This document shows positions 26,725 through 64,000 of a DNA stretch of 64,000 bases, in pieces; the first letter of the stretch is position 1; each line of letters begins with the position of its first letter. The notes under the pieces are model-generated. The model had not been told where the DNA came from. It searched no databases and was given only the letters and a program-made list of their open reading frames with translations. A program made the translations under genes and the position numbers. The DNA comes from Rebecca billardiae RCC1528 (taxonomy: Eukaryota; Protista; Haptophyta). The DNA lies in contig OZ251232.1 in NCBI GenBank assembly GCA_965240325.2, positions 930,001 through 994,000 of the forward strand, read 5' to 3'.

Positions 26725-29700
26725 ATGAGGCGAAACAGCATCGAGGGGCTCTTTGCCAACCTGTTCGGCACAGGCGCCGGCGGGGTCGCCGCCACGCCGA
26801 CCACCAACGCGCCGAAGAAGCTGCCAATCGATCCCGCGGACCTACCGCGCAGCGTGCAGGCAGTGCCGCGGTGGACTGAGATCGCGCCAGACGAGCTGGC
26901 GTACGGCGAGGCACTGGGACGAGGCACGTTCGGCAGAGTATACGCTGGGACTCTCAGAGGCTCACACCCCGTCGCCATCAAGCGCGTGGAGGTCGACGTC
27001 GAGCTGGCCGCCATCGGCAAGGCGGTCGGCGCGCAGCAGGGCCTGCAGCACGCGCACCTGCTGCAGCCGTGTGGGGCATGCACGCTCGACAGCGGGAGCG
27101 CGTGCATCGTGCTGCCGCTCGCGTCGGGGCAGGGCAGCCTGCACCAGCTCCTCCGCGCCGCGCGCGCGCCTCTGCCCGAGGCCGTCGCCGCGCACTGCGC
27201 GCTCGAGGTGGCGAGTGCCCTTGCGTACTTGCACGCGCGCGGCGTGTGCCACCGCGACCTCAAGTCGCCCAACGTGCTGATCGCGGAGGACGGCGCGCTG
27301 AAGCTCGCGGATGCGGGGCTGCCGCCCGTGGCGGGGCAGCCGCCCGCGCTCGCCGTGGGCACCTACTCCCACAACGGCACGCTCGAGTGGCTCGCCCCCG
27401 AGCTGCACGGCGCGCCCGCGCGCAGGAGCGCCGGCAGTGGCGTGGACTTGGCAAAGGTGGGAGCCTGGGCGGAGCGGAGCCGGCGTGGCGGCGGCGTGAT
27501 GCGCTGCGCCCGGCCGCGCCCCCGCCAACACGCGCGCCGCGCCGCGCCTCCCCACGCGCCCCTCGCCGCGCCGCAGGCCGACGTCTACTCCTTCGCCATG
27601 CTGATCGTCGAGCTGCTCACGCGCAAGGCGCCCTGGCAGGGCAAGCGCGGAGACGTGCTTGGCCTGGCGCTGCGGCTGGACAAGCGGCCGAGCGTGCCCT
27701 CGTGGTCGAAGCCGGTGCAGCTCGCCGCGCTCGCGCGCGCGATGTGGGCGCGGCAGCCCGACGCGCGGCCGGCCGTGGACGAGCCGCTCTGCGTCCGGAT
27801 CGACCAGATCCTGCTCGACTGCCCGCGGCCCTCGGACAAGGCGAGCGCAGAGCTGGGTGCTCTCGGCGAGCGCGTCGCGGCGCGGCTGGCGGGCACGCTC
27901 GCTGCGCCGTACGGCACGCAGGCGGCGGCGGCGCCGGCGCCGGCGCCGGGCGCGGGGCAGGTCTTCGCCCTGACGCTGCGCGACAGCACGCCCGCGACGC
28001 CCGTCCTCTCGCGCACGCCCTCGGGGATCGGCGCGTGGCCGCAGATTGTAGCGGCGCTTGACGCGGCGGCGCGCGGCGGCGAGGCCGCGGCCGACGCGGC
28101 CGAGCGCGCGCTCGACGACGCGGCCACGCGCGCGGGCGAGGTGGGCACGGAGCAGACGGCGGCGGAGTCGGGCGCGCTCGCCGCGGTCGTGCGCGCGATG
28201 GGCGCGCACATCGCCTCGCCCGCCGTGCAGGAGGCGGGCTGCCGCGCGCTCGTCAACGTGTGCGCGGGCGCGGACGAGGCGCGCGACGGGCGAGCGCAGT
28301 GCTCGACGCAGGAGGGCGCGATCGAGGCGGTCGTGCGCGCGATGGGCGCGCACAGCGCGCGCGTCGTGCTGCAGGAGGCGGCGTGCAAGGCGCTGATCAA
28401 CCTGACCGCCGGCACGGACGGCGCGCGCGACGCTCGCGCGCAGCGCGCGGCGGAGGACGGCGCGATCGAGGCGGTGGTGCGCGCGATGGGCGCACACGCA
28501 ACGCACGCGACACTGCAGGAGCGCGGCTGCTGGGCGCTGCGCAACATCTGCGCGGGCGACGACCGCGCGGTGGACGCGCGCGCGCAGCGCGCGGTCGAGT
28601 CGAGCGCGCTCGAGGCCGTGGTCCGCGCGATGGGCCTCCACCTCGCCTCCGCCGCCGTGCAGGAGTGGGGCTGCCGCGCCCTGCTCAACATGTGCGTGAG
28701 CGGCGACGACGGCGCCGGCCACGAGAGGCACGCGCAGCGCGCCGCGGACGCGGGGGTGCTCCTCGCGCTCGTGCGCGCGATGGGCAAGCACGGCGCGAGC
28801 GTGGACGTGCAGGAGTGGGCGTGCAAGGCGCTGGTGAACGTGTGCGAGGGCGCCGACCGCGGCGCAGCCGACGCGCGCAAGCAAGCCGCCGCGGACGCGG
28901 GCGCGCTGCCTGCCATTGTCCGATCGATGGGCCTGCTCAAGGGGGCGGGCGCGCCCGTGCTGGCCTGGGAGTGCCGCGCGCTGTCGTGCGTCGCGGGGGG
29001 CACCGACGCCGCGCGGGGCGGGCGCAAGCAGCAGGCGCTCGCCGCGGGCGCGCTCGCCGCGCTCGTCCGCGCGATGGGCGCGTACGCCTCGCGCGCCGAG
29101 CTGCAGAGCGAGGCGGCGCGCGCACTCGTTGAGCTGTGCGCTGGCACGGACGCGGCGCGCGACACGCGCGCCGCGCGCGCGGTCGAGGCGGGCGCGCTGC
29201 CCGCGCTCGTGCGCGCGATGGGCGCGCACGCCGCGGACGCTGAGCTGCAGCTGCACGCGTGCCGCGCGCTGGTCAACGCGTGCGCCGGCGCCGACCTGGA
29301 GGGCCGTGCGCGCCGCGCGCAGCACGCGGCGGACGCGGGCGCGCTCGAGGCGCTGGTCGGCTCGATGCGCGCGCACGCACGCACGGACCCGACTGTGCAG
29401 GAGTGGGCGTGCCGTGCGCTCGTCAACGTGTGCGCGGGCGACGACGCGCCCCGCGCGCGCCGAGCGCAGCTCGCCGTCGACGCCGGTGCACTCGACGCCG
29501 CCGTCGCCGCGCTGACGGCCGAGCTGGCGCACGCCGGCTCGCGCGAGTGGGCGTGCCGCGCGCTCGTCAACATGTGCGCGGGCGTCGACGCGCGGCGCGA
29601 CGCGCGCGCGGACCGCGCCGCGTCCGCGGGCGCGCTGGAGGCGCTGGTCGGCACGCTGGGCGCGCCGCACGCGCCGAGCGCGACCGTGCAGCAGTGGGCG

Positions 29701-30471
29701 GCGCGCGCGCTGACGAACGTGTGCGCGGGCGACGACGACGCGCGTGACGAGCGCGCGCAGCGCGCCGTGCGCGCGGGCGCGCTCGAGGCCACCCTCTCCC
29801 TACTCGGCAGGCACCACGCGGACGCGCCCATGGTGGAGCAAGGCTGCTGGGCGCTGCGCAACCTCACGGCGGGGGAGGACGCGGAGTGGAGCGCGCGCGC
29901 CGCGCGCGCCGCCAGCGCGGGGCTCGTCCAGGCCGTCGCGCGCGCCATGGAGGAGCACGCCGGGGATGCGGGCGTGCAGCACTGGGCCTGCAACGTCCTC
30001 GTGAACGTGACGGCCGGCGACGACGACGCGGCGGACTCGCGGAAGCAACTCGCTGCCGACGCGCGCGCGCTGCCGGCCGTGCTGCACGCCATGCGGCGGC
30101 ACGTCGGCTCATCGGCGCAGCAGGTGTGGGGCTGCCGCGCGCTCGTCAACATCCTCGCGGGCGGCGACCGCGGCCGCCCCGCGCGCGTGCAGCTCGCCGT
30201 GGACAAGGGCGCGCTGGACGCGGTCGTGGGCGGCATGGACGCGCACCCGCACGCCGAGGAGGTCCAGGCGTTCGGCTGCCGCGCGCTCGTCGTGCTGTGC
30301 GCGCCGCCGCACGCCGAGGCGCGCAGGCGGCTCGCGACAAGGCACGGCGCGCGCGGCGCCGCGCTCAGCGCGGAGAAGGCGCACCCAGCCGCGCCGCGCG
30401 TGCAGCGCTGGGCGAACGAGCTTGTGCGCATCCTGCCCTCCGAGCGTGACGCGGGCGGTGGCGAGGTGTGA
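26725..30471 (+). CDS. TKL-type protein kinase (degenerate motifs) fused to ~47-aa ARM-like repeats
   Basis: Motifs GRGTFG, VAIK, HRDLKSPN, LADAG, WLAPE and DVYSF. An in-frame 120-bp intron lies at 27457-27576 (AAG|GTGG...CCGCAG|GCC). About 16 repeats of the form GALxAVVRAMGAH...VQEWGCRALVNVCAG follow from ~28150. The start was chosen at MRRNSIEG; upstream ATGs lie in intergenic-like sequence. Confidence 0.85.
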   Translation: MRRNSIEGLFANLFGTGAGGVAATPTTNAPKKLPIDPADLPRSVQAVPRWTEIAPDELAYGEALGRGTFGRVYAGTLRGSHPVAIKRVEVDVELAAIGKAVGAQQGLQHAHLLQPCGACTLDSGSACIVLPLASGQGSLHQLLRAARAPLPEAVAAHCALEVASALAYLHARGVCHRDLKSPNVLIAEDGALKLADAGLPPVAGQPPALAVGTYSHNGTLEWLAPELHGAPARRSAGSGVDLAKVGAWAERSRRGGGVMRCARPRPRQHARRAAPPHAPLAAPQADVYSFAMLIVELLTRKAPWQGKRGDVLGLALRLDKRPSVPSWSKPVQLAALARAMWARQPDARPAVDEPLCVRIDQILLDCPRPSDKASAELGALGERVAARLAGTLAAPYGTQAAAAPAPAPGAGQVFALTLRDSTPATPVLSRTPSGIGAWPQIVAALDAAARGGEAAADAAERALDDAATRAGEVGTEQTAAESGALAAVVRAMGAHIASPAVQEAGCRALVNVCAGADEARDGRAQCSTQEGAIEAVVRAMGAHSARVVLQEAACKALINLTAGTDGARDARAQRAAEDGAIEAVVRAMGAHATHATLQERGCWALRNICAGDDRAVDARAQRAVESSALEAVVRAMGLHLASAAVQEWGCRALLNMCVSGDDGAGHERHAQRAADAGVLLALVRAMGKHGASVDVQEWACKALVNVCEGADRGAADARKQAAADAGALPAIVRSMGLLKGAGAPVLAWECRALSCVAGGTDAARGGRKQQALAAGALAALVRAMGAYASRAELQSEAARALVELCAGTDAARDTRAARAVEAGALPALVRAMGAHAADAELQLHACRALVNACAGADLEGRARRAQHAADAGALEALVGSMRAHARTDPTVQEWACRALVNVCAGDDAPRARRAQLAVDAGALDAAVAALTAELAHAGSREWACRALVNMCAGVDARRDARADRAASAGALEALVGTLGAPHAPSATVQQWAARALTNVCAGDDDARDERAQRAVRAGALEATLSLLGRHHADAPMVEQGCWALRNLTAGEDAEWSARAARAASAGLVQAVARAMEEHAGDAGVQHWACNVLVNVTAGDDDAADSRKQLAADARALPAVLHAMRRHVGSSAQQVWGCRALVNILAGGDRGRPARVQLAVDKGALDAVVGGMDAHPHAEEVQAFGCRALVVLCAPPHAEARRRLATRHGARGAALSAEKAHPAAPRVQRWANELVRILPSERDAGGGEV

Positions 30472-50940: not shown

Positions 50941-52212
50941 TTAGTACGTGTTGTGCGGCAGCTGACGGTCGAGCTCGCGCGCACTGAGCGACAGCATGCG
51001 CCCGCTCCGGCTCGACGCGGGCGAGGGTGAGCCTCCGTCGTGCGGCGCGGGCACGGCGCGCCGGCTCGCCACTCGGTCGGCGGGGCTGAGGCCCGGCGCA
51101 GCGCTCGGCCCGGCCGCCCTCGGCGCGGGCGAGGCGGCGCCCACGACGACCGCCGGCCGCGGCGTGCGTCGGATCTCCGGGTAGTCTGCGAGCACGGACT
51201 CGCGGAGCACCTCGGCCGCGTAGTCGCGCGTGCCCATGTACCCGAGGTCCAGGCTGAGCTGCGCGAGGGCGGCACGCGAGGTCAGCAGCATGGGCCGGTC
51301 CTGCCACGCGGGCTGCAGGCTGGGCGCGAGGGCGGCGGTGTGGCGCTCGTGGACGGCGCCGTTCGTGCGCCGTGAGAGCGCGTCCATCGCGCGCGCGGCG
51401 TGCGCGCCGGCACCCTCGGGCGCCGTCGCTGCGTGGGCGAACAGCGCCGTCGCGGCGTGTGACGGGCCGCACACGGCTGCGGCGTGCGCGTGCGCGCACG
51501 CGGCCGCCTCGCGCGCGGCGGCCGACCGAGGCCAAGCCCTGGGAGCGGCAGCAGCGCCCCTTGCCTCGTAGTTCAGCGGCGGGGGCTGCACCAGGTCGTA
51601 CACGCCACCGACCGGCCTCTGCTCCTCCGCGCGCGCCGCCGCGCGCGCGTCGAGCGCCGTGCGGGGCCGATGGAAGGCGATCGGTGGCGGCTGGGCGGGC
51701 GCGGACTGCTGCGCGCTGCGGGTGGCGTTGTCAAGCCCGGCCGCGCGCAGGAGGGTGCGCGTCGGGTGCACGGCCCGAGCCCCGGGGAGCAGGCTCTCGC
51801 GCAGCAGCGCCTCGTCAAAGCCGCCGCCGCCCACACCTGAGGCACCCTCGACCACACCATCACCGCCGCCGCCGCCGCCGCCGTCGGTGGTCGCAGCGCC
51901 GTGGGCGACGCTCGTCGGGCGCAGCGGTGGCGGCCGCGCGGGCTGCGCCGACGGCGCCGTGCCCGCGCCGTGCAGGAGCACCGCCTCGCCCGCGCCCGCC
52001 GCGCCGTGCCCGCCGTGCAGCACCCCTGTCTTCGCGTGCACGTGCACGCACGGCGCGCGCAGCCGCACCAACGCTCACACATCCGCAGCCCACGCGCGCG
52101 CTGCAGCGCGCCGTCCGCGCCCAGCGTGTGCTTGCCCGAGAGCGCGCCGCCGGCGAGCGCGCCGTACGCCAGCAGCAGGACGCCATGCGGTTTGAGTCCG
52201 GAGTGGACGGGG
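50941..52212 (-). pseudogene. Deleted copy of the AKR-chimera locus; only the last AKR residues and the unrelated tail remain
   Basis: Collinear and highly similar to ~59724-61044. The ~910 bp matching 61045-61957 (AKR start and core) are missing at junction ~52213. A small indel near 52070 shifts the frame. Confidence 0.8.
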
Positions 52213-52782
52213 GGATCGACGGTCGCGCGCTGGCGAAGGCGATGGCATGGGCGACGGTGCGCGAGGCTGGCGCGCATAGCACCTAATATGGCGGTCGTCC
52301 CTTCGATCGCGATCTATATACGCTTGCTCATGCAGACGACGCTTGACGGCCGCTACTCAGCGCGTGCGCCGACACTTGGTCTTGGCCGTGCCAATTAGTG
52401 GCGGCGCGCGTTGGCGCGCGGCTCGGCTGGCGTCGATCGGCGTGGCACGGCGCGACGGAGGACCAGTCACGCCGGCCGAAGGGCTAGACCGACGGGCGGC
52501 TTTGAAGAGTAGAGTGGCTGTATTCTAGTCCCATGCGTACTGGCTCAAGGCACGGCTGCACTGTGCACACGTCGGCACGACTGCTGACTGCTGCCGCCTG
52601 CCGCCCGCGACTGGCCGACTACCGCAATCAGCTGGGCAACCGGCCGCGTGCACAGGCTGGGGCGGGACGGCCCGCGGCTGCGGACGCGGCGGCTGGCGGC
52701 GCAGTCGGCGCCGGGAGCGGGCATGCAGGCCGACGGCTGCGCGCGCCCACACTGCCCAACGCGCGCCATCCTCCAGGCATCC

Positions 52783-55700
52783 CTAGATGCCGAGGCCCCC
52801 GCTGCGGCCACTGCCTTCCCAGGCCTGTCGGATGGCGGCCTTCTGAGCATCGCTCAGCTGGTTGCCGCTGTGTGCACAGCGGAGGCACGCCGAGGGGAGG
52901 GGAAGCGCGGAGAGGCGAGCGCCGCGGTCGCGCGGGGTGGGGTGGACAGTGTCAGCCCACGCCGCTGCGCACCACACGCCGCGCCGCGCACCGCACCGCA
53001 CCGCACCGCTGCGCACGCGCCGCCACACGCCAAGGGGCGGCGCGCGCGCCGCGCGGCGAGTGCGCCGGGCGCTGCCGCAGCCTCGCGCGACGGCGCTGCT
53101 GCGGCGCCGTGCGCGGGTGCTCGCACGTGCGCGCGATGCGCACGGCGCGCGAGCCCCCCCCACCCCCCCTTCCGCCCGCGCCGCGCGCCGCCCCCCTCGC
53201 CGCGCCGTGCGTGCGCGTACCCCAGGTAGAGCACCTGCAGCTTGGTGTTGGTGCGGAGCGCCTCCGCCAGCGCTGTGCCGGAGACGTCCGTCAGCTGGTT
53301 GTTGCTGTGTGCACAGCGGAGGCACGCCGAGGGGAGGGAAAGCGCGGAGAGGCGAGCGCCGCGGTCGCGCGGGGTGGGGTGGACAGTGTCAGCCCACGCC
53401 GCTGCGCACCACACGCCGCGCCGCGCCGCGCACCGCACCGCACCGCTGCGCACGCGCCGCCACACGCCAAGGGGCGGCGCGCGCGCCGCGCGGCGAGTGC
53501 GCCGGGCGCTGCCGCAGCCTCGCGCGACGGCGCTGCTGCGGCGCCGTGCGCGGGTGCTCGCACATGCGCGCGATGCGCACGGCGCGCGAGCCCCCCTCCC
53601 ACCCCCCCTTCCGCCCGCGCCGCGCGCCGCCCCCCTCGCCGCGCCGTGCGTGCGCGTACATCAGGTAGAGGTCCTGCAGCTTGGTGTTGGTGCGGAGCGC
53701 CTCCGCCAGCGCTGTGCCGGAGACGTCCGTCAGCTGGTTCCAGCTGTGTGCACAGCGGAGGCACGCCGAGGGGAGGGGAAGCGCGGAGAGGCGAGCGCCG
53801 CGGTCGCACGGGGTGGGGTGGGCAGTGTCAGCCCACGCCGCTGCGCACCACGTGCACCGCACCGCACCGCACCGCCCACCGCCATGCTGAGCGCGTGCTG
53901 CCGCACCGGCCGCGCGCGCCGCCCGCCGTGGGGTGACGCGCGATGTGGGGCGCGCGCTGGGCGCGGCCGCAGCCTCGCGCGACGGCGCTGCTGCGGCGCC
54001 GTGCGCGGGTGCTCGCACGTGCGCGCGATGCGCACGGCGCGCGAGCTCCCCCCCACCCCCCCTTCCGCCCGCGCCGCGCGCCGCCCCCCTCACAGCGCCG
54101 TGCGTGCGCGTACCCCAGCCCGAGCCTCTGCAGCTTGGTGTTGGTGCGGAGCGCCTCCGCCAGCGCCCTGCCGGAGACGTCCGTCAGCTGGTTGTCGCTG
54201 TGTGCACAGCGGAGGCACGCCGAGGGGAGGGGAAGCGCGGAGAGGCGAGCGCCGCGGTCGCACGGGGTGGGGTGGACAGTGTCAGCCCACGCCGCTGCGC
54301 ACCACGCGCCGCGCACCGCACCGCACCGCACCGCACCGCACGCGCCGCCACACGCCGAGGGGCGGCGCGCGCGCCGCGCGGCGAGTGCGCCAGGCGCTGC
54401 CGCAGCCTCGCGCGACGGCGCTGCTGCGGCGCCGTGCGCGGGTGCACGCACGTGCGCGCGATGCGCACGGCGCGCGAGCCCCCCACCCACCCCCCCTTCC
54501 GCCCGCGCCGCGCGCCGCCCCCCTCGCCGCGCCGTGCGTGCGCGTACATCAGCCAGAGGTGCTGCAGCTTGGTGTTGGTGCGGAGCGCCTCCGCCAGCGC
54601 TGTGCCGGAGACGTCCGTCAGCTGGTTGTACCTGTGTGCACAGCGGAGGCACGCCGAGGGGAGGGGAAGCGCGGAGAGGAGAGCGCGGTGGTCGCACGGG
54701 GTGGGGTAGGCAGTGTCAGCCCACGCCGCTGCGCACCACGCACCGCGCACCGCACCGCACCGCCCACCGCCATGCTGAGCGCGTGCTGCCGCACCGGCCG
54801 CGCGCGCCGCCCGCCGTGGGGTGACGCGCGATGTGGGGCGCGCGCTGGGCGCGGCCGCAGCCTCGCGCGACGGCGCTGCTGCGGCGCCGTGCGCGGGTGC
54901 ACGCGCGGGTGCACGCGCTGCACACGACGCGCGGCCCGTCCTTCCCCCACTACACCGCCCGCGCCGCCCGCCGCCCCGCTCGCCCCACCGTGCGTGCGCG
55001 TACCTCAGGTGGAGCTCCTGCAGGCGGCAGCTGTCCGCCTGCAGTGCCTGCGACAGCAGCCGCACGCACTCGTTGTCCACGCCCGTCTTGTCGAGATCGA
55101 GCTTGGTCAGCTTGGCACTGTGCGCGGCGAGGTGTGCGATCGCCTGCGCGTGCGCCGCCACCGCCGTCTTCCTCTCCCACTCCGCCTTCTCCAGCCCCAT
55201 CAGCGCCTCTGCTGAGCCCACGCCCACAGCGCGCGCGAGCGCCTCGAGCTGCTCTGCAGAGGCGCGGACTGGAGGCGGCGCCGCGCGCGGCTGCACGGGT
55301 GGCGGCGCCGCCGCCGCGCGCGGCTGCTCCGCAGCCGCGCGGACGGGTGGCGCCGCCGCCGCGCGCGGCTGCTCCGCAGCCGCGCGGACGGGTGGCGCCG
55401 CCGCCGCGCGCGGCTGCTCCGCAGCGGCACGGACGGGTGGCGCCGCCGCCGCCGCGCGCGGCTCTGCGGCGGTCAGCGCCGCGACGAGCTCTGAGGCACT
55501 GGGCCGGAGCACGTATTCCTCTTTGAGGCAGCGCTCCTTCAGGCGGCGGACTGCGAGTGGCGTGCCGGCGGGCAGCCGAGCCCGCGCCCGTCCGTTCGGC
55601 TGCTGCTGCGTGAGCAGCACCTCGACCAGCACGCCAAAGCTGAAGACGTCGGCCTTCTCGCTCGCGTGGCGGCCGAGCAGCACCTCGGGCGGCGCAAACG

Positions 55701-57084
55701 CGGGCGTGTGCCCCGGCACCGTCACGCGTGACTGCGACTTGGTGCGCGCCAGCCCCACATCGGCGAGCTTGGCCAGGCTGTAGTCCTCGTTGAGGAGCAC
55801 GTTGGCCGGCTTGACGTCGTAGTGCACCACGGGCGGCTCGAGCGTGTGCAGGTAGTGCAGCGCGTACGCCACGTGCAGCGCGATGCGCTGCCCGCCCGCC
55901 GCCCAGGCCACGCGCGTCGGCTCAATCGCGAGCGCGTCGCTCAGGCTGCCGCCGCGCATGCGCTCGGTGACGATCATCATGTTCTCCGGCTCGTCGCACG
56001 CGCCCAAAGAGAGCACGATGTGCGGGTGGCGCAGCTGGTGCAGCATCGCCACCTCGCGCTCAAACTCGCGGCGCGCTTCGGACCCCGCGGCGTTCAGCCG
56101 CTTCACCGCGACCGGCTGCGCGCCCCGCAGCCGCGCCGCGTACACGCGCCCAAAGCCGCCGCTGCCGAGCAGCACCTCGCCGCCATCCGCGCCGCGCTCG
56201 ATCTCGACCTCGGCCGGGCGCACGTACCACTGCTGACGCGGCGCTGGCGCGGGCAGGCTGTTCACGCCGGCACCGTGATGCTGCGCAGCGCCGGCAGCGC
56301 CGCGCTCGGCGAGGCGGTGGTAGCGCGCACACGCGTCCGCGTCCTCTCGCGAGTAGATCTCGCCCGGCCGGTGCATCACGTCGACGATGTGCGCGCTGCC
56401 GTAGACGTGTACCACGTTCCACGCGTGCCCTCCAGCGGACACCCTCCCCGCGAAGTCGCCGCGCACCAGCGCGCACTCGATGCCCAGCGCGTCGCACAGC
56501 ACCTTGAAGAGCAGCGCGCGGTGCCGGCACACGCCTAGCGAGATGTCACCGAGCGGCACGAGCATCGAGCCCCTCTCCTGCACGAGGGCGTTGATCTCTT
56601 GGTTGGACTGCTCGACGAGATCGTCCGTCAAGCCCCCGAGCCGCTCGGACACGTGCGCGCCGAGCACCTTGATGCGATCGCGCATGTCCGTGATGGGCTG
56701 CAGCCGAGAGCGAGCTTCCTCGATGCAGTCGCGCAGGGACACGTCGATGCGTGTGTCGACCACGAGCACCTCGCGGCCGCCAGGCGCGCCAGCGGGACGG
56801 CGAGCAAGGTCCTCTGCTGCGGGTAGCGCAGCATCACGGGCCATCCGGCCGGCGTCGACGAAGCCGTCGCCCACGCGCGTGTCGAAGTCGAGCTTGTGCT
56901 CGTTGAAGTACCGCTCGGCGCTGGGCGCAAGGGGCAGCACGAGCACACGGTCGAGCCCGACCTCGCCGATCGCGCTGCCCGGAGCAAGCACGAGTCGGTC
57001 ATCGCCGATGCACGCGCTCACGCGCGCACGGGCACCGCTGCCGACGATCACCACTTCCTTCCCGACGAGGCTCTCAGGGGACAT
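52783..57084 (-). CDS. EDR1/CTR1-domain + TKL kinase + exon-modular RI-type LRR protein (~833 aa)
   Basis: Exons 57084-55004, 54631-54548, 54197-54114, 53743-53660, 53304-53221 and 52867-52783; all introns are GTAC...CACAG, phase 2. EDR1 motifs: GDISLGVCRHRALLFKVLCD, HAWNVV, VDVMHRPG. Kinase motifs: GSGGFG, VAVK, EFEREV, HYDVKPAN, DVG, DVFSFG. LRR: NQLTDVSGTALAEALRTNTKLQxLxLxx. Confidence 0.9.
52868..55003 (-). repeat. Tandem exon+intron units (period 434-454 bp) with near-identical introns
   Basis: Introns of 372, 350, 370, 355 and 353 bp share donor GTACGCGCACGCA and acceptor GTGCCTCCGCTGTGCACACAG, plus an internal (GCACC)n tract. Confidence 0.95.
55260..55470 (-). repeat. 45-bp coding tandem repeat (PRAAAAPPVRAAAEQ) in the kinase-LRR linker
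   Basis: Three full and two partial copies are visible in the translation. Confidence 0.85.
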
Positions 57085-57174: not shown

Positions 57175-58617
57175 ACCGATTTCGGGCAACCGTGCTCATC
57201 AAAGTGATTCTCAAGCTGAAGTGAGACTTCAACTTCATCCCCTCTTCGGAAGTGTGTTCGGAAGCCAGCTCCTAGTTCAGAACACCTTCGGTCCTATGAA
57301 GTCGAACGTCCTTTGCGAACGGGTCTCGCTTCGGTACCGCTTCGCAAACTTGACGGCTCGGAGTGGCAAAGTCGTTCCGAAGCGAAGCCAAAGTACAGGG
57401 TCGAGTTGGTCAGCGGGCGGCGGCGGCGGCGAGGGCTTCTCCGGCGGCGGGGCGCGCACGGGGCACGGCGCGGCGGGAGCGGATGTGCTCGCACAGCCGG
57501 CGCGTGCGGACGGGCTGTTGTGGAAGTGCACATGGCGCCCTCCTGCGCAGCGCGTCTTGCGCCATGCCTCTCTCGCCGCGGCTCAGGGCAGCGCGCATGC
57601 GCGCGCCGCCTCAAGGCCAGCCTTGCCGCGCCGCAGCCGACCGCGCGCGCGCCGTGCGCGGCGTGGCCGGGAAGGAACGGGCGCGGCTGCCGGGCGAGAT
57701 GGCGACCTCACGTGTGCTCGCCATGCCGCCCCGCCACGCCTTGACGACCGTGTCGTCGGTCCGTTTGCATGCCTCTTCGGCTGGTCACAAATGGCGTGCA
57801 CGGCCTCGCGGTCGTGACCCTTATCGGGACGATCATTGAGACGCAGAACGGTGCCAGACGGGCACAAGTGCTGTGCGTGCATGCGTGTCTATCACCATAC
57901 GGCCATGTAGAAGGTGCGCCATGCGACGCTTTTCTCGCGCTGATGATCGTTCATCATCATCTTCTTCGAGCTCAGGTCTGGCTTGTTACGACTAGTGGTC
58001 AGCCAACTCGTCAACAGCTGTGTGGATCCGTTATTGTGCCCTTTCGCGGCGTCGCGGGGCGGCATGGCGTGCGCGTATGGCGTCGCCATCTCGCCCGGCA
58101 GCCGCGCCCGTTCCTTCCCGGCCACGCCGCGCACGGCGCGCGCGCGGTCGGCTGCGGCGCGGCACTAGGCTGGCCTTGAGGCGGCGCGCGCATGCGCGCT
58201 GCCCTGAGCCGCGGCGAGAGAGGCGTGGCGCAAGACGCGCGGCGCAGGAGGGCGCCACGTGCACTTCCACAACAGCCCGTCCACACGCGCCGGCTGTGCG
58301 AGCACATCCGCTCCCGCCGCGCCGTGCCCCGTGCGCGCCCCGCCGCCGGAGAAGCCCTCGCCGCCGCCACCGCCGCCGCCGCCGCACAAGCGAACCCGAT
58401 TGGGCAAAGTGCTCCCAACGTGTGAAGCCAGCTTCTCAGAAGAGGGGTCACCGCTTTGACACGTGTTCCGCTTCGACTTCCAAAGTGGAACGCAAACCGC
58501 AAGCTCACTTCGCTTTAGGATTCGACAGAAGCTTTGGAAGTCGAAGTCGGTTCGACTTGACTTTCCAATCTGAAGTCACACAATCAGACTTTATGAGCAC
58601 GGTTGCCCGAAATCGGT
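57175..58617. mobile_element. Non-autonomous foldback/MITE-like element (~1.44 kb)
   Basis: Perfect 25-bp terminal inverted repeats (accgatttcgggcaaccgtgctcat at 57175, reverse complement ending at 58617). Internal inverted arms of ~330 bp at ~57413-57740 and ~58048-58385. No transposase and no clear TSD. Confidence 0.75.
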
Positions 58618-59645: not shown

Positions 59646-61778
59646 TCATGCTCGACCTCGCAGCGCAGCGCTCTGCTCGGCAGTGCGACGCGCCGCGCCG
59701 CCCCCGTGGGCGTGCGCGTAGCGCGTGTTGTGCGGCAGCCGGTTGAGCTCGCGCGCACTGAGCGACAGCATGCGCCCGCTCCGGCTCGGCGCGGGCGAGG
59801 GTGAGCCTCCGTCGTGCGGCGCGGGCACGGCGCGCCGGCTCGCCGCACGGTCGGCGGGGCTGAGGCCCGGCGCGGCGCTCGGCCCGGCCGCCCTCGGCGC
59901 GGGCGAGGCGGCGCCCACGACGACCGCCGGCCGCGGCGTGCGTCGTATCTCCGGGTAGTCTGCGAGCACGGACTCGCGGAGCACCTCGGCCGCGTAGTCG
60001 CGCGTGCCCATGTACTCGAGGTCCAGGCTGAGCTGCGCGAGGGCGGCACGCGAGGTCGGCAGCATGGGCCGGTCCTGCCACGCGGGCTGCAGGCTGGGCG
60101 TGAGGGCGGCGGTGTGGCGAGCGTGGACGGCGAGTGCCTCCGCACCGCTCGTGCGGCGTGAGAGCGCGTCCATCGCGCGCGCGGCGTGCGCGCCGGAGCC
60201 CTGGGCCGCCGTCGCTGCGTGGGCGAACAGCGCCGTCGCGGGGTGCGACGGGCCGCACACGGCTGCGGCGTGCGCGTGCGCGCGCGCGGCCGCCTCGGCA
60301 GCCGCGGCGGCCGAGGCGGCCGAGCTGGGTGCGCACGGAGCGGCCGACCGAGCCCGAGACCTGGGAGCGGCGGCGACGCCCGTCGCCTCGTAGTGCAGCG
60401 GCGGGGGCTGCGCCAGGTCGTACACACCACCGACCGGCCTCCGCTCCTCCGCGCGCGCCGCCGCGCGCGCGTCGAGCGCCGCGCGGGGCCGATAGAAGGC
60501 GATCGGTGGCGGCTGGGCGGGCGCGGACTGCTGCGCGCCACGGCCCGCGGTGGCATTGTCAAGCCCGACCGCACGCAGGAGGGTGCGTCTCGGGTGCACG
60601 GCCCGAGCCCCGGGGATCAGGCTCTCGCGCAGCAGCGTCTCGTCAAAGCAGCCAATGCACGCACCCGAGGCACCCTCGACCGCACCGCCACCGCCGCCGC
60701 CGCCGCTTCCGCCGGCCGCAGCGCCGTGGGCGACGCTCGTCGGGCGCAGCGGTGGCGGCCGCGCGGGCTGCGCCGACGGCGCCGTGCCCGCGCCGTGCAG
60801 GAGCACCGCCTCGCCCGCGCCCGCCGCGCCGTGCCCGCCGTGCAGCACCCCTGCCCCCGCGTGCACGTGCACGCACGGCGCGCGCACGGCACAGCCGCAC
60901 CGACGCTCGCACAGCCGCAGCCCGCGCGCGCGCTGCAGCGCGCCGTCCGCGCCCAGCATGTGCTTGCCCGAGAGCGTGCCGCCGGCGAGCGCGCCGTACG
61001 CCAGCAGCAGGACGCCATGCGGTTTGAGTCCGGAGTGGACGGGGCCGCAAGCCTCGACGGTCGCGTCCTCCCCGAACTTGCGGTGCAGCACGCTGAAGTC
61101 GTTCTGGATGGTGACGGGCTTCTGCACGCCCAGCCGCGCGCACGCCTCGAGCAGCTTGGCCACGCCGAGCGCGTTCTCGTTGCTCACGCCCCACTGCTTG
61201 ATCTTGCCGGCCGCGAGCAGCTCACCGACCGCGCCGACCGTCTCGTCGAACGGGACGAAGCCCTCGAACTCCTTGCCGCGCACGTAGTTGCGCTGGTCGA
61301 AGATGGCGCTGCACCGGTCGGGCCAGTGCAGCTGGTACAGGTCGATGCAGCGCACGCCGAGCCGCTCCAGCGAGCCGTCGCACGCCGCGAGGACCTGCTG
61401 CCGGCTCATCTCCAGAACGGTCGGCGGCTGCTCGCCCGGCGGGTACTTGCGCTCGCCGACGATGTGCGCGAGGCGCGCGCCCGGGCTGCGCGAGGCCACC
61501 TTCGACGCGATCACCACCTTCTCGCGCCGGCTCGGCTCCTCCTTGAGCCACTTGCCCACGATGCGCTCCGAGGCGCCGCACGTCTCCGCGCGCGGCGGCA
61601 CCGGGTACAGCTCGGCGACGTCGAAGAAGTTGCAGCCCGCCCCGAGCGCCGCCGACATGATGGCGAAGGAGGTGGCCTCGTCCGCTTGCTCGCCAAACGT
61701 CATCGTCATCGTGCCCAGGCAGCCCTCGCTCACCGTGAGCGGGTGCGGCGTGCCCTCGCCGAGCGTGACGTACTTCAT
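59646..61778 (-). CDS. Tas-like aldo-keto reductase, C-terminally truncated and fused in frame to unrelated sequence (chimera or pseudogene)
   Basis: MKYVTLG...CLGTMTMTFGEQ, FFDVAELY, IASKV, IDLYQLHWPDR, WGVSNE, IQNDFS, LLAYGALAGGTLSGKH. AKR similarity ends at ~60960. Confidence 0.7.
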   Translation of the reverse strand: MKYVTLGEGTPHPLTVSEGCLGTMTMTFGEQADEATSFAIMSAALGAGCNFFDVAELYPVPPRAETCGASERIVGKWLKEEPSRREKVVIASKVASRSPGARLAHIVGERKYPPGEQPPTVLEMSRQQVLAACDGSLERLGVRCIDLYQLHWPDRCSAIFDQRNYVRGKEFEGFVPFDETVGAVGELLAAGKIKQWGVSNENALGVAKLLEACARLGVQKPVTIQNDFSVLHRKFGEDATVEACGPVHSGLKPHGVLLLAYGALAGGTLSGKHMLGADGALQRARGLRLCERRCGCAVRAPCVHVHAGAGVLHGGHGAAGAGEAVLLHGAGTAPSAQPARPPPLRPTSVAHGAAAGGSGGGGGGGAVEGASGACIGCFDETLLRESLIPGARAVHPRRTLLRAVGLDNATAGRGAQQSAPAQPPPIAFYRPRAALDARAAARAEERRPVGGVYDLAQPPPLHYEATGVAAAPRSRARSAAPCAPSSAASAAAAAEAAARAHAHAAAVCGPSHPATALFAHAATAAQGSGAHAARAMDALSRRTSGAEALAVHARHTAALTPSLQPAWQDRPMLPTSRAALAQLSLDLEYMGTRDYAAEVLRESVLADYPEIRRTPRPAVVVGAASPAPRAAGPSAAPGLSPADRAASRRAVPAPHDGGSPSPAPSRSGRMLSLSARELNRLPHNTRYAHAHGGGAARRTAEQSAALRGRA

Positions 61779-62569
61779 CGTCTCGTGTGCGCGGGCGACG
61801 CGGAAAGCGGCGGGAGCGGACGCATCCAGTGACGCCCGACGATCGGGTGTCTCGAGACTCGCAGTCTCGGAGTCCGGACGTTGAACGTGCTGGCCGCACG
61901 GCAGGCCGGGGATACGCCCGTCCGCGGCATGATGCCGGCGCGGCCGCCAGCGGCGGCGATCGCCGGTCGCGCGCGCTGGCGAAGGCGATGGCTGGGCGAC
62001 GGTCACGGTGCGCGAGGCTGGCGCGCATAGCACCCAATGGTCTTTATTTATTCTATATTACTGCCCATTCCCCCCCGCGCGTTCGCTTGCTCGGACGCTT
62101 GGCGGCCGCCCCGGCGCGTGCGCGGACGGCGTGCGCCGACGCAGCTTGGCTGTGATCGCTGTGCCACTACGAAAGTAAGCTGGCGCGGCTGCGCCAGGGC
62201 CGGCGGCGGCGCGGCGGAGGACCAGTCACGCCGGCCGAAGGGCTATATAGAAACGGGCTTTGCTGAAGAGAGTCAGTGGCTGCATGGTAGTCCCATGCGC
62301 ACTGGTTCAAGGCACGGCTGCACTGTGCACACGTCGGCACGACTGCTGACTGCTGTCGCCTGCCGCCCGCGACCGGCCGACGACCGCGGTGATCATGATC
62401 AGCTGCTGCTGATGGGCCGAACCGCGGCCGCGTGCACAGGCTGGGGCGGGACGGCCCGCGGCTGCGGACGCGGCGGCTGGCGGCGCAGTCGGCGCCGGGA
62501 GCGGGCATGCAGGCCGACAGCTGCGCGCGCCCACACTGCCCAACGCGCGCCATCCTCCTCCAGGCCTCC

Positions 62570-64000
62570 CTAGATGCGGAGGGTCCCGCCGTCGCGGCCA
62601 CTGCCTTCCCAGGCCTGTTTGATGACGGCATTCTGAGCAGCGCTCAGCTTGTTGCCCCTGTGTGCACAGTGGAGGCACGCCGAGGGGAGGGGAAGCGCGG
62701 AGAGGCGAGCGCCGCGCTCGCGCGAGGTGGGGTGGGCAGTGTCAGCCCACGCCGCTGCGCACCACACGCCGCGCCGTGCACCGCACCGCACCGCACCGCT
62801 GCGCGCGCGCCGCCACACGCCGACTGCCGAGGGGCGGCGCGCGCGCCCCGCGGCGAGTGCGCCGGGCGCTGCCGCAGCCTCGCGCGACGGCGCTGCTGCG
62901 GCGCCGTGCGCGGGTGCTCGCACGTGCGCGCGATGCGCACGGCGCGCGAGCCCCCCCCCCCCACCCCCCCTTCCGCTCGCGCCGCGCGCCGCCTCCCTCG
63001 CCGCGCCGTGCATGCGCGTACCCCAGGTGGAGCACCTGCAGCTTGGTGTTGGTGCGGAGCGCCTCCGCCAGCGCTGTGCCGGAGACGTCCGTCAGCTGGT
63101 TGTAGCTGTGTGCACAGCGGAGGCACGCCGAGGGGAGGGGAAGCGCGGAGAGGCGAGCGCCGCGGTCGCGCGGGGTGGGGTAGGCAGTGTCAGCCCACGT
63201 CGCACCGCACCACGCACCGCCCACCGCACCGCACCGCACCGCTGCGCACGCGCCGCCACACGCCGAGGGGCGGCGCGCGCGCCCCGCGGCGAGTGCGCCG
63301 GGCGCTGCCGCAGCTTCGCGCGACGGCGCTGCTGCGGCGCCGTGCGCGGGTGCTCGCACGTGCGCGCGATGCGCACGATGCGCGAGCCCCCCCCCACCGC
63401 CCCTTCCGCCCGCGCCGCGCGCCGCCTCCCTCGCCGCGCCGTGCGTGCGCGTACCCCAGGCCGAGCCACTGCAGCTTGGTGTTGGAGCGGAGCGCCTCCG
63501 CCAGCGCTGTGCCGGAGACGTCCGTCAGCGTGTTGTCCCTGTGTGCACAGCGGAGGCACGCCGAGGGGAGGGGAAGCGCCAAGAGGCGAGCGCAGCGGAC
63601 GCGCAGGGTGGAGTGGGCAGTGTCAGCCCACGCCGCTGCGCAGCACGCGCCGCGCACCGCACCGCACCGCACCGCACCGCACGCGCCGCCACACGCCGAG
63701 GGGCGGCGCGCGCGCCCCGCGGCGAGTGCGCCGGGCGCTGCCGCAGCCTCGTGCGACAGCGCTGCTGCGGCGCCGTGCGCGGGTGCTCGCACGTGCGCGC
63801 GATGCGCACGGCGCGCGAGCCCCCCCCCCCACCACCCCTTCCGCCCGCGCCGCGCGCCGAACCCCTCGCCGCCCCGTGCGTGCGCGTACCTCAGGTAGAG
63901 CTTCTGCAGCTTGGTGTTGGTGTGGAGCGCCTCCCCCAGCGCAGAGATGTCCGTCAGCTGGTTGCCGCTGTGTGCACAGCGGAGGCACGCCGAGGGGAGG
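62570..64000 (-). CDS. Second exon-modular LRR gene, 3' part (paralog of 52783-57084; 5' end beyond window)
   Basis: Exons 63967-63890 (78 bp), 63538-63455, 63105-63022 and terminal 62657-62570 (GNKLSAAQNAVIKQAWEGSGRDGGTLRI*). Same intron family and phase. Confidence 0.9.

What the first reader, a model, noticed from the sequence alone, without database searches (positions are those of the whole stretch)
52783..55100. Candidate diversifying receptor system: one LRR per 84-bp exon, near-clonal scaffold, hypervariable binding-face codons
Seen: each internal exon encodes the nearly invariant scaffold NQLTDVSGTALAEALRTNTKLQ, mostly identical even at synonymous sites. The x positions of LQxLxLxxN differ in every module, often by multi-nucleotide changes. 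Gene 1: E-H-R-Y, H-W-I-D, R-G-G-W, D-Y-I-N, V-Y-G-G. Gene 2: K-Y-R-D, W-G-G-Y, V-H-G-G. Established: these x residues form the concave ligand-binding beta-sheet of LRR solenoids, the surface diversified in lamprey VLRs and plant NLRs. One-repeat-per-exon shuffling is described for brown-algal (Ectocarpus) ROCO LRR and NB-ARC-TPR genes. Inference: this is an intracellular immune-like recognition repertoire in a unicellular alga, built from swappable cassettes under diversifying selection. The ORF track misses it entirely.
Basis: partly seen in the sequence, partly recalled or inferred. Interest (0 to 1): 0.9.

Follow-up and report, generated by a model that had tools for sequence, protein, structure and literature searches.

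The report
Fast-varying LRR exon array on kinase
A very GC-rich haptophyte alga has a cytosolic kinase gene whose tail is a chain of near-identical one-repeat exons that differ almost only at the four residues expected to touch a ligand, a design already known from brown-algal and fungal candidate immune receptors but not reported in this algal group.

Summary
On the minus strand, gene 1 (57084 to 52783) joins an EDR1/CTR1 peptidase-like domain, a non-RD protein kinase and six RI/NOD2-type 28-residue LRRs. Four LRRs are single 84-bp phase 2-2 exons inside a ~437-bp exon-plus-intron tandem unit. A truncated paralog lies at 62570-64000.

The 12 'x' nucleotides of LQxLxLxxN differ by 58% between units. 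The other 72 exon bases differ by 2.3% and the introns by 1.4-17% (Fisher p down to 1e-12).

Between the paralogs, three junctions are recognisably orthologous, yet half of their x residues differ. Gene 1 has two extra units. Intron types do not follow x-site orthology. This points to unequal crossing-over or gene conversion of cassettes, with selection keeping and renewing diversity on the binding face.

The window holds no silent donor cassettes. Splicing and any immune role are untested.

The same four positions are also the most variable in unrelated RI-type LRR arrays. The principle is published for Ectocarpus ROCO genes and for fungal NLR repeats. The scan has already noted the same cassette design in many other genes on other pieces of this genome. 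Verdict: a real, clean new member of a known kind.

The parts
55004..57084 (-). Gene 1 exon 1: ATG at 57084, EDR1/CTR1 peptidase-like domain, protein kinase, linker and first (cap) LRR; ends ...CTGAG before the GT donor
   Evidence: ORF; Pfam; donor position
56356..56919 (-). EDR1_CTR1_ARMC3 peptidase-like (transglutaminase-like) domain, residues 56-243
   Evidence: PF14381, E=2.2e-29
55591..56172 (-). Protein kinase domain, residues 305-498; non-RD type (GSGGFG, VAVK, HYDVKPAN, DVG)
   Evidence: PF00069, E=1.7e-39; motifs
55274..55462 (-). Four 45-nt repeats coding a PPVRAAAEQPRAAAA linker between kinase and LRRs
   Evidence: TRF; translation
54632..55003 (-). Intron 1 (372 nt, type B), flanked by x codons E-H-R|Y
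54548..54631 (-). LRR exon 2 (84 nt)
54198..54547 (-). Intron 2 (350 nt, type A), junction H-W-I|D
54114..54197 (-). LRR exon 3 (84 nt; scaffold T to R change)
53744..54113 (-). Intron 3 (370 nt, type B), junction R-G-G|W
53660..53743 (-). LRR exon 4 (84 nt)
53305..53659 (-). Intron 4 (355 nt, type A), junction D-Y-I|N
53221..53304 (-). LRR exon 5 (84 nt)
52868..53220 (-). Intron 5 (353 nt, type A), junction V-Y-G|G
52783..52867 (-). Gene 1 last exon: C-terminal half-repeat cap GNQLSDAQKAAIRQAWEGSGRSGGLGI and TAG stop
62570..64000 (-). Gene 2 (paralog, 5' end beyond the window). Exons 63890-63967 (78 nt), 63455-63538 and 63022-63105; last exon 62570-62657. Introns 63539-63889, 63106-63454, 62658-63021 and partial 63968-64000
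50958..52782 (-). 3' flank of gene 1. It belongs to a segmental duplication of about 8.8 kb shared with 59732-62569 and includes a 5'-truncated aldo/keto reductase copy

Best explanation
Gene 1 encodes a soluble 833-residue protein: an EDR1/CTR1 peptidase-like domain, a non-RD Ser/Thr kinase, a Pro/Ala-rich repeat linker and a short C-terminal horseshoe of six RI/NOD2-type LRRs. The LRR part grew by tandem copying of one ~437-bp unit, an 84-bp phase 2-2 exon plus its intron. Unequal crossing-over and gene conversion keep exon scaffolds and introns nearly identical and change the unit number. Selection keeps, and between paralogs renews, different residues at the four solvent-exposed positions of each beta-strand (x in LQxLxLxxN). 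The result is a germline-encoded, fast-evolving binding surface on a constant solenoid. Ligand binding there most likely regulates the N-terminal kinase and peptidase-like module, as in other sensor-plus-effector proteins. Shown here: the anatomy, the concentration of variation at the x sites, paralog divergence, a change in unit number and the intron mosaic. Inferred: splicing, ligand binding, kinase regulation and any role in recognising pathogens or other non-self.
For: Anatomy and reading frame. Unspliced translation leaves the LRR frame after intron 2 because intron lengths are 0, 2, 1, 1 and 2 mod 3. The module matches RI-type LRRs of NOD2, LRRC34 and RI-like proteins. A model of the closest public module relative (P0094, pLDDT 79.5) places x1 and x2 in the beta-strand, alternating with the core Leu, and x3 and x4 just after it. 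That model matches tropomodulin, NOD2, NLRP1 and RI folds. Variation: x sites 58%, scaffold 2.3%, introns 1.4-17%, with p down to 6e-12. For example, units 4 and 5 differ at 6 of 12 x nucleotides but at only 5 of 353 intron nucleotides. Paralogs: junctions J1~JA, J3~JB and J5~JC give the best of 60 possible assignments and are collinear (differences 3, 4 and 2 of 12). Even so, they differ at 9 of 36 x nucleotides, against 4.9% for between-gene type-A introns; the binomial P for the 7 non-synonymous changes is 3e-4. In the last exon pN is 0.117 and pS 0.038, while the first ~145 nt of the 3' UTR differ at 2 positions. Gene 1 has two units without a counterpart in gene 2. Type-B introns i1 and i3 are sisters (support 100/99), although their x sites match gene-2 junctions that carry type-A introns. 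The same four positions are the most variable in most of 19 unrelated RI-type LRR arrays. Precedents: Ectocarpus and Saccharina ROCO LRR exons, phase 2 with four selected concave sites; fungal NLR repeats with concerted evolution plus four hypervariable sites.
Against: There is no transcript evidence for the junctions. Only 8 junctions from 2 genes were available, so codon-model tests were not possible. At the orthologous x codons pS (2/7.5) is as high as pN (7/28.5). The excess over introns may therefore reflect older x codons inside homogenised surroundings, rather than faster adaptive change. Only the type-A/type-B split of the intron tree is well supported; separation by gene has 35/63 support. 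No ligand, expression or population data exist. Short RI-type LRR domains also serve non-immune roles, for example tropomodulin and axonemal proteins, which were the top structural matches.
Confidence: 0.6

Rival explanations
1. A fixed binding surface with concerted evolution and no diversification. Each repeat carries its own specific contact residues for one conserved partner. Gene conversion homogenises everything else, and purifying selection merely protects the x codons from being overwritten. The protein would then be an ordinary signalling scaffold, not a variable receptor.
For: Intron types are discordant with x-site orthology, which shows conversion that spares x codons. pS is about equal to pN at orthologous x codons. 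RI-type LRR folds also occur in housekeeping proteins. The same positional pattern is seen in many unrelated LRR arrays.
Against: Half of the x residues (6 of 12) differ between the two recent paralogs, while scaffolds differ at 0-3 of 72 nt and the proximal 3' UTR by about 1.4%. The last exon shows pN/pS of about 3. Unit number differs between the paralogs.
Confidence: 0.25
2. Very recent tandem duplication followed only by intense positive selection, with no gene conversion. Units would be a few per cent old, and x codons changed 20-40 times faster than neutral sites.
For: Gene-1 type-A introns differ by only 1.4-3.1%, while the flanking x sites differ at 4-8 of 12 nt. Two gene-1 units have no gene-2 counterpart.
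Against: This requires multi-nucleotide changes in most x codons within the time of about 5 intron substitutions. It does not explain x-site orthology across genes combined with a different intron type. Synonymous differences at x codons are also elevated.
Confidence: 0.1
3. A dedicated diversification mechanism: somatic cassette assembly as in lamprey VLRs, targeted hypermutation, or regulated exon skipping that yields combinatorial and junctional diversity.
For: All internal exons are 84 nt and phase 2-2, so any skipping stays in frame and re-forms the split x3 codon (AG|G gives R, AG|C gives S, AT|C gives I, AT|G gives M). Alternative splicing of LRR exons is reported for Ectocarpus ROCO genes.
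Against: Gene 1 is a complete germline ORF. Profile searches found no silent, antisense or orphan cassettes or solo introns anywhere else in the 64-kb window. No RNA family or unusual element lies in the array. There is no transcript evidence.
Confidence: 0.05

Closest known systems
Brown-algal ROCO (LRR-ROC-COR) genes of Ectocarpus and Saccharina (PMC3341825, PMC11378527)
   Same: One LRR per exon, symmetric phase-2 introns and tandem exon duplication or shuffling. Four concave-face positions of LxxLxLxxN are under diversifying selection. The proteins are cytosolic, with a signalling domain attached.
   Different: Here the repeats are 28-residue RI/NOD2-type, not the 23-24-residue type. The LRRs are C-terminal. 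The effector is an EDR1 peptidase-like domain plus a non-RD kinase rather than ROC-COR. The ~350-nt introns are themselves near-identical. No intronic or antisense silent LRR exons were found in the window. The lineage is a haptophyte, not a stramenopile.
Fungal NLR-like genes with highly internally conserved WD40, ANK or TPR repeats (Podospora nwd/hnwd; PMC1805685, PMC2873952, PMC4986451)
   Same: Repeats are more than 85% identical to each other. Exactly four hypervariable surface positions per repeat are under diversifying selection. Repeat number changes, and repeats undergo concerted evolution within and between paralogs. Variable effector domains sit on one repeat type.
   Different: The repeat fold differs (LRR here; fungi have none in their NLRs). 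There is no NACHT or NB-ARC domain. Repeats are separated by introns here.
Vertebrate NOD/NLRC and ribonuclease-inhibitor LRR domains
   Same: The same RI-type 28-residue LRR sequence class (NOD2 5irm/5irl).
   Different: There is no NACHT domain. Vertebrate repeats are not near-clonal, and in zebrafish NLR-B30.2 genes the LRRs are not the variable part (PMC4852459).
EDR1/CTR1 Raf-like MAPKKKs of plants
   Same: An N-terminal EDR1/CTR1 peptidase-like domain followed by a TKL-type kinase.
   Different: Plant members are RD kinases without LRRs. Here the kinase is non-RD (HYD) and carries a C-terminal LRR array. The closest homologue, 56% identical and from Pavlovales sp. CCMP2436, is also followed by RI-type LRR units, but without the intron-per-repeat layout.

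Membership tests
RI-type (ribonuclease-inhibitor/NOD-like) LRR | 28-29-residue period with LxxLxLxxN/CxL followed by an amphipathic helix | tested here: met
   Exons are exactly 28 codons. phmmer of one module hits NOD2 (5irm/5irl), LRRC34 and RI-like proteins.
RI-type (ribonuclease-inhibitor/NOD-like) LRR | Pfam LRR_6 or another LRR model above threshold | tested here: inconclusive
   Single 27-residue modules gave only sub-threshold LRR_4 hits (E=0.02-0.09). The spliced domain could not be submitted by reference.
RI-type (ribonuclease-inhibitor/NOD-like) LRR | Alpha/beta horseshoe fold with x1 and x2 in the concave beta-strand | tested here: inconclusive
   Tested only on the nearest public relative, P0094 (17 of 22 scaffold identity). 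Strands fall on x1-L-x2-L, and Foldseek hits tropomodulin, NOD2, NLRP1 and RI. The window's own spliced protein was not folded.
Ectocarpus-type exon-shuffled LRR receptor genes (ROCO) | One LRR per symmetric exon in tandem | tested here: met
   84-nt phase 2-2 exons. The junctions are inferred, not seen in RNA.
Ectocarpus-type exon-shuffled LRR receptor genes (ROCO) | Excess variation at four concave positions | tested here: met
Ectocarpus-type exon-shuffled LRR receptor genes (ROCO) | ROC-COR GTPase module | tested here: not met
   Pfam finds only the EDR1 peptidase-like and kinase domains.
Ectocarpus-type exon-shuffled LRR receptor genes (ROCO) | Silent or antisense LRR exons in introns and nearby | tested here: not met
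   nhmmer and tblastn find only the 7 in-array exons and 8 complete introns, plus the partial intron at the window edge.
NLR / STAND receptors | Central NACHT or NB-ARC NTPase | tested here: not met
Fungal-type highly internally conserved repeat receptors | Repeats more than 85% identical, with four hypervariable surface positions | tested here: met
   Module identity is 80-87% including x sites (71% for the 78-nt gene-2 exon), and the scaffold is about 98% identical at nucleotide level.
Fungal-type highly internally conserved repeat receptors | Repeat-number polymorphism and concerted evolution | tested here: inconclusive
   Unit number differs between the paralogs, and intron type is discordant with x-site orthology. 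Allelic polymorphism could not be tested.
Lamprey VLR-type somatic assembly | Incomplete germline gene flanked by donor cassettes | tested here: not met
   Gene 1 is a complete ORF and the window holds no donor cassettes.
Plant-type LRR receptor kinase | Signal peptide, extracellular LRRs and a transmembrane helix before the kinase | tested here: not met
   The maximum 19-residue hydropathy is 1.54, inside the EDR1 domain, and the LRRs are C-terminal to the kinase.
EDR1/CTR1 Raf-like kinases | EDR1 domain followed by a kinase | tested here: met
   PF14381 E=2.2e-29 and PF00069 E=1.7e-39.
EDR1/CTR1 Raf-like kinases | RD-type catalytic loop (HRD) | tested here: not met
   The catalytic loop reads HYDVKPAN.

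The most novel reading that the evidence does not exclude
This pavlovophyte may use one interchangeable LRR exon-plus-intron cassette across many effector architectures. Other notes of the scan report it on EDR1-kinases, kinase-RBR ligases, U-box kinases, a KAP NTPase and a TIR-SAM protein. Together these would form a large innate recognition repertoire. Homogenised introns would serve as recombination substrates, and in-frame exon skipping would add combinatorial and junctional (split x3 codon) diversity.
Probability: 0.15. Interest if true: 0.8.

Novelty: new member of a known kind. Interest (0 to 1): 0.5.

Why it matters
Haptophytes are major marine primary producers and are attacked by giant viruses, but their recognition machinery is essentially unknown. 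In Gephyrocapsa huxleyi, virus-resistant cells merely show raised TIR, LRR and NACHT transcripts (PMC12489294). A cytosolic kinase carrying a rapidly diverging LRR face is a concrete candidate sensor that can be tested by expression, binding and strain comparison. It belongs to what the scan suggests is a genome-wide cassette family. The locus also gives a clean natural example of hypervariable codons surviving 2-14 nt from sequence that is being homogenised. That is useful for studying how gene conversion and selection interact.

Tried and rejected
1. I looked for the species or close relatives in public data. The EDR1-kinase query found nothing above 56% identity. A module profile run against 1.84 billion representative proteins gave no near-identical scaffold; the best was 17 of 22 residues. 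Exact-DNA scans of metagenome and viral contigs found nothing. A protein-pattern scan of metagenomes gave only two distant RI-LRR proteins. The family could therefore not be enlarged and codon site models could not be run.

2. I searched the window for silent cassettes or solo introns and found none.

3. An Rfam search of the array found nothing.

4. A lookup of earlier scan notes by sequence came back blank.

5. I did not fold the spliced LRR domain of gene 1.

6. I tested for within-gene concerted evolution using an intron tree. Only the type-A/type-B split is supported; separation by gene is not.

7. Rejected: an assembly or polishing artefact, which would not preserve codon-level differences at exactly four positions per repeat.

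8. Rejected: a plant-type receptor kinase, because there is no transmembrane segment or signal peptide.

9. Rejected: an NLR, because there is no NTPase domain.
Full report
**What is there**

The finding lies on the minus strand of a window with 73.9% G+C. Tandem Repeats Finder reports 4.9 copies of a 437-bp unit at 52854-55023, and a second array of 433-bp units at 62644-64000.

Using the shared donor (GTACGCGCA...) and acceptor (...TGTGCACACAG), the borders fall out mechanically. Gene 1 has a long first exon (57084-55004). It then has four internal exons of exactly 84 nt: 54631-54548, 54197-54114, 53743-53660 and 53304-53221. The last exon runs 52867-52783 and ends in TAG. The five introns are 372, 350, 370, 355 and 353 nt, and all split a codon after its second base.

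Joined, the exons give 2502 nt, which is 833 codons with a single terminal stop. Without splicing, the reading frame leaves the repeat frame after intron 2 and stops inside exon 3 (ORF 54184-57084). The splice model is therefore strongly implied by the sequence, but it has not been seen in RNA.

**The protein**

Exon 1 carries an EDR1/CTR1/ARMC3 peptidase-like domain (PF14381, E=2.2e-29, residues 56-243). It also carries a protein kinase domain (PF00069, E=1.7e-39, residues 305-498). The kinase has GSGGFG, VAVK and DVG motifs, but its catalytic loop reads HYDVKPAN, so it is a non-RD kinase.

Four 15-residue PPVRAAAEQPRAAAA repeats follow, then a divergent first LRR. There is no signal peptide or transmembrane segment; the highest 19-residue hydropathy, 1.54, lies inside the EDR1 domain.

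Each 84-bp exon encodes x4-NQLTDVSGTALAEALRTNTKLQ-x1-L-x2-L-x3. A single module matches the RI-type LRRs of NOD2 (5irm/5irl), LRRC34 and RI-like axonemal proteins. Single modules are too short for Pfam thresholds.

I could not submit the spliced domain because it has no reference. I therefore folded the nearest public relative of the module, P0094, which shares 17 of 22 scaffold residues. The model (pLDDT 79.5) puts beta-strands exactly on x1-L-x2-L, with x3 and x4 just after them. It matches tropomodulin, NOD2, NLRP1 and ribonuclease-inhibitor structures. By homology and by established LRR geometry, the four x residues of each repeat line the concave face.

- Mean pairwise difference is 58% at the 12 x nucleotides and 2.3% at the 72 scaffold nucleotides. 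The introns differ by 1.4-17%.
- All 12 x columns vary, against 5 of 72 scaffold columns and 85 of 391 intron columns.
- Fisher tests of x sites against intron plus scaffold reach 1e-10 to 6e-12 for individual pairs. For example, the units around introns 4 and 5 differ at 6 of 12 x nucleotides but at only 5 of 353 intron nucleotides.
- The five variable scaffold columns are all non-synonymous (T to R, Q to T, T to S).
- Complete identity at synonymous sites is not remarkable in itself. With introns only 1.4-6% apart, fewer than about one synonymous difference per pair is expected.

**Paralog comparison**

Gene 1 and the truncated gene 2 belong to a segmental duplication of about 8.8 kb. This duplication also carries an aldo/keto reductase gene, which is complete next to gene 2 and 5'-truncated next to gene 1.

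By x-site distance, gene-2 junctions A, B and C pair with gene-1 junctions 1, 3 and 5, with 3, 4 and 2 differences of 12. This is the best of all 60 possible assignments and it is collinear. Gene 1 thus has two units (junctions HWID and DYIN) with no counterpart in the visible part of gene 2. That is direct evidence for gain or loss of units.

At the orthologous junctions 9 of 36 x nucleotides and 6 of 12 residues differ. Type-A introns differ by 4.9% between the genes, and the binomial P for the 7 non-synonymous changes is 3e-4. The last exon differs at 11 of 84 nt. Over its first 20 codons pN is 0.117 and pS is 0.038, while the first ~145 nt of the 3' UTR differ at 2 positions. The exposed parts of the LRR domain have therefore diverged faster than their surroundings since the duplication.

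**Homogenisation**

Introns fall into two types that differ by a replaced central block. Introns 1 and 3 of gene 1 (type B) are sisters with 100/99 support. Yet the x sites beside them match gene-2 junctions that carry type-A introns.

Either introns have been converted without touching x codons only 2-14 nt away, or the x-site similarity is convergent. I favour conversion. In addition, synonymous differences at the orthologous x codons (2 of 7.5 sites) are as frequent as non-synonymous ones (7 of 28.5), and both exceed intron divergence. This suggests that x codons are older than their homogenised surroundings, but the numbers are too small to decide. Separation of the introns by gene is not supported (35/63).

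**No sign of a dedicated machinery**

Profile searches with the exon and intron models find only the seven in-array exons, the eight complete introns and the partial intron at the window edge. There are no silent, antisense or orphan cassettes elsewhere in the 64 kb. Rfam finds nothing in the array.

All internal exons are symmetric, so exon skipping would stay in frame and re-form the split x3 codon. That is only a possibility; nothing here shows it.

**Context**

The best relatives of the EDR1-kinase part are proteins of the haptophyte Pavlovales sp. CCMP2436, at 56% identity. The window's composition resembles that published for Diacronema lutheri, 73.25% G+C (PMC8379373). The window's own protein is not in the databases, so the species is not settled.

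In CCMP2436 the homologous gene is followed by unannotated RI-type LRR units. These units are contiguous, with no intron between them. They flip at a perfect palindrome into inverted units next to an assembly gap. The EDR1-kinase-LRR architecture is therefore shared in the order, but the intron-per-repeat layout is not. This fits co-amplification of one intron-bearing unit in the window's lineage.

A module profile search of 1.84 billion representative proteins gave 1149 hits, none with a near-identical scaffold. The best hits come from a fungus, an amoeba endosymbiont and unnamed eukaryotic assemblies, and they show the same look. In 19 proteins with at least six in-register modules, positions 1, 26 and 28 are among the four most variable in 17, 16 and 13 of them, and position 24 in 9. 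The pattern is thus a general property of highly repetitive RI-type LRR arrays.

**Literature**

Ectocarpus ROCO genes have one LRR per 72-nt exon, exon shuffling and positively selected concave residues (PMC3341825). In Saccharina and Ectocarpus the introns are phase 2, four concave sites are selected and the LRR exons are alternatively spliced (PMC11378527).

Fungal NLR-like genes have WD, ANK or TPR repeats that are more than 85% identical. They undergo concerted evolution within and between paralogs and show diversifying selection on four positions per repeat (PMC4986451). My searches found no paper describing this design in haptophytes. In G. huxleyi, virus-resistant cells over-express TIR, LRR and NACHT genes (PMC12489294).

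**Earlier notes of this scan**

These are unchecked leads. They report the same one-LRR-per-84-bp-exon design on other pieces of this genome: on EDR1-kinases, kinase-RBR ligases, a U-box kinase, a KAP NTPase, membrane proteins and a TIR-SAM protein. I could not read those loci. If the notes are right, they make a repertoire plausible.

**Verdict**

The best explanation is a germline tandem cassette array shaped by three forces: unequal crossing-over, gene conversion, and selection for different and changing residues on the ligand face of a cytosolic sensor kinase. The immune interpretation is reasonable but untested. The principle is already known from brown algae and fungi, so this is a new member of a known kind, found in a new lineage and on a new effector architecture.

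Noticed in passing
window 57416-57740 and 58048-58374: Inverted repeat with arms of about 325 nt, 93-98% complementary, and a 307-nt loop. It lies about 330 nt upstream of the gene-1 start codon. It could be a foldback or MITE-like element, or a promoter feature.
   Followed up: no
window 50958-52212 versus 59732-61044; complete gene about 61781 to 59650, minus strand: An aldo/keto reductase gene (PF00248, E=8.9e-37) is complete downstream of gene 2. Downstream of gene 1 only a 5'-truncated copy is present. Both are part of the same segmental duplication of about 8.8 kb.
   Followed up: partly
window 9293-19878 and 332-4193: A 10.5-kb array with a 12-nt period, (CCGCCGCCGAGC)n, with higher-order periods of 63-429 nt. 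There is also a separate 3-4-kb GGC-rich array. Together they may encode giant low-complexity proteins.
   Followed up: no
window 20969-24046: Repeats of 78-150 bp that appear, from the repeat consensus read by eye, to encode a Cys-framed NYN motif.
   Followed up: no
window 28225-29820: About 11 repeats of 144-147 bp (48-49 codons) that look like ARM/HEAT-type repeats.
   Followed up: no
L003 10362-10902 (Pavlovales sp. CCMP2436, MU631381.1): The annotated EDR1-kinase gene P0001 stops before unannotated RI-type LRR units. At about 10522 a perfect palindrome flips the array into 4-5 contiguous, intron-less 84-nt units on the opposite strand, next to an assembly gap. This is either a mis-assembly or a real inversion.
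   Followed up: partly
window 52783-52640 versus 62570-62425: The first ~145 nt after the stop codons of the two paralogs differ at only 2 positions and one 3-nt indel, although the last coding exon differs at 13%. This is either a conserved 3' UTR element or a recent conversion tract.
   Followed up: no
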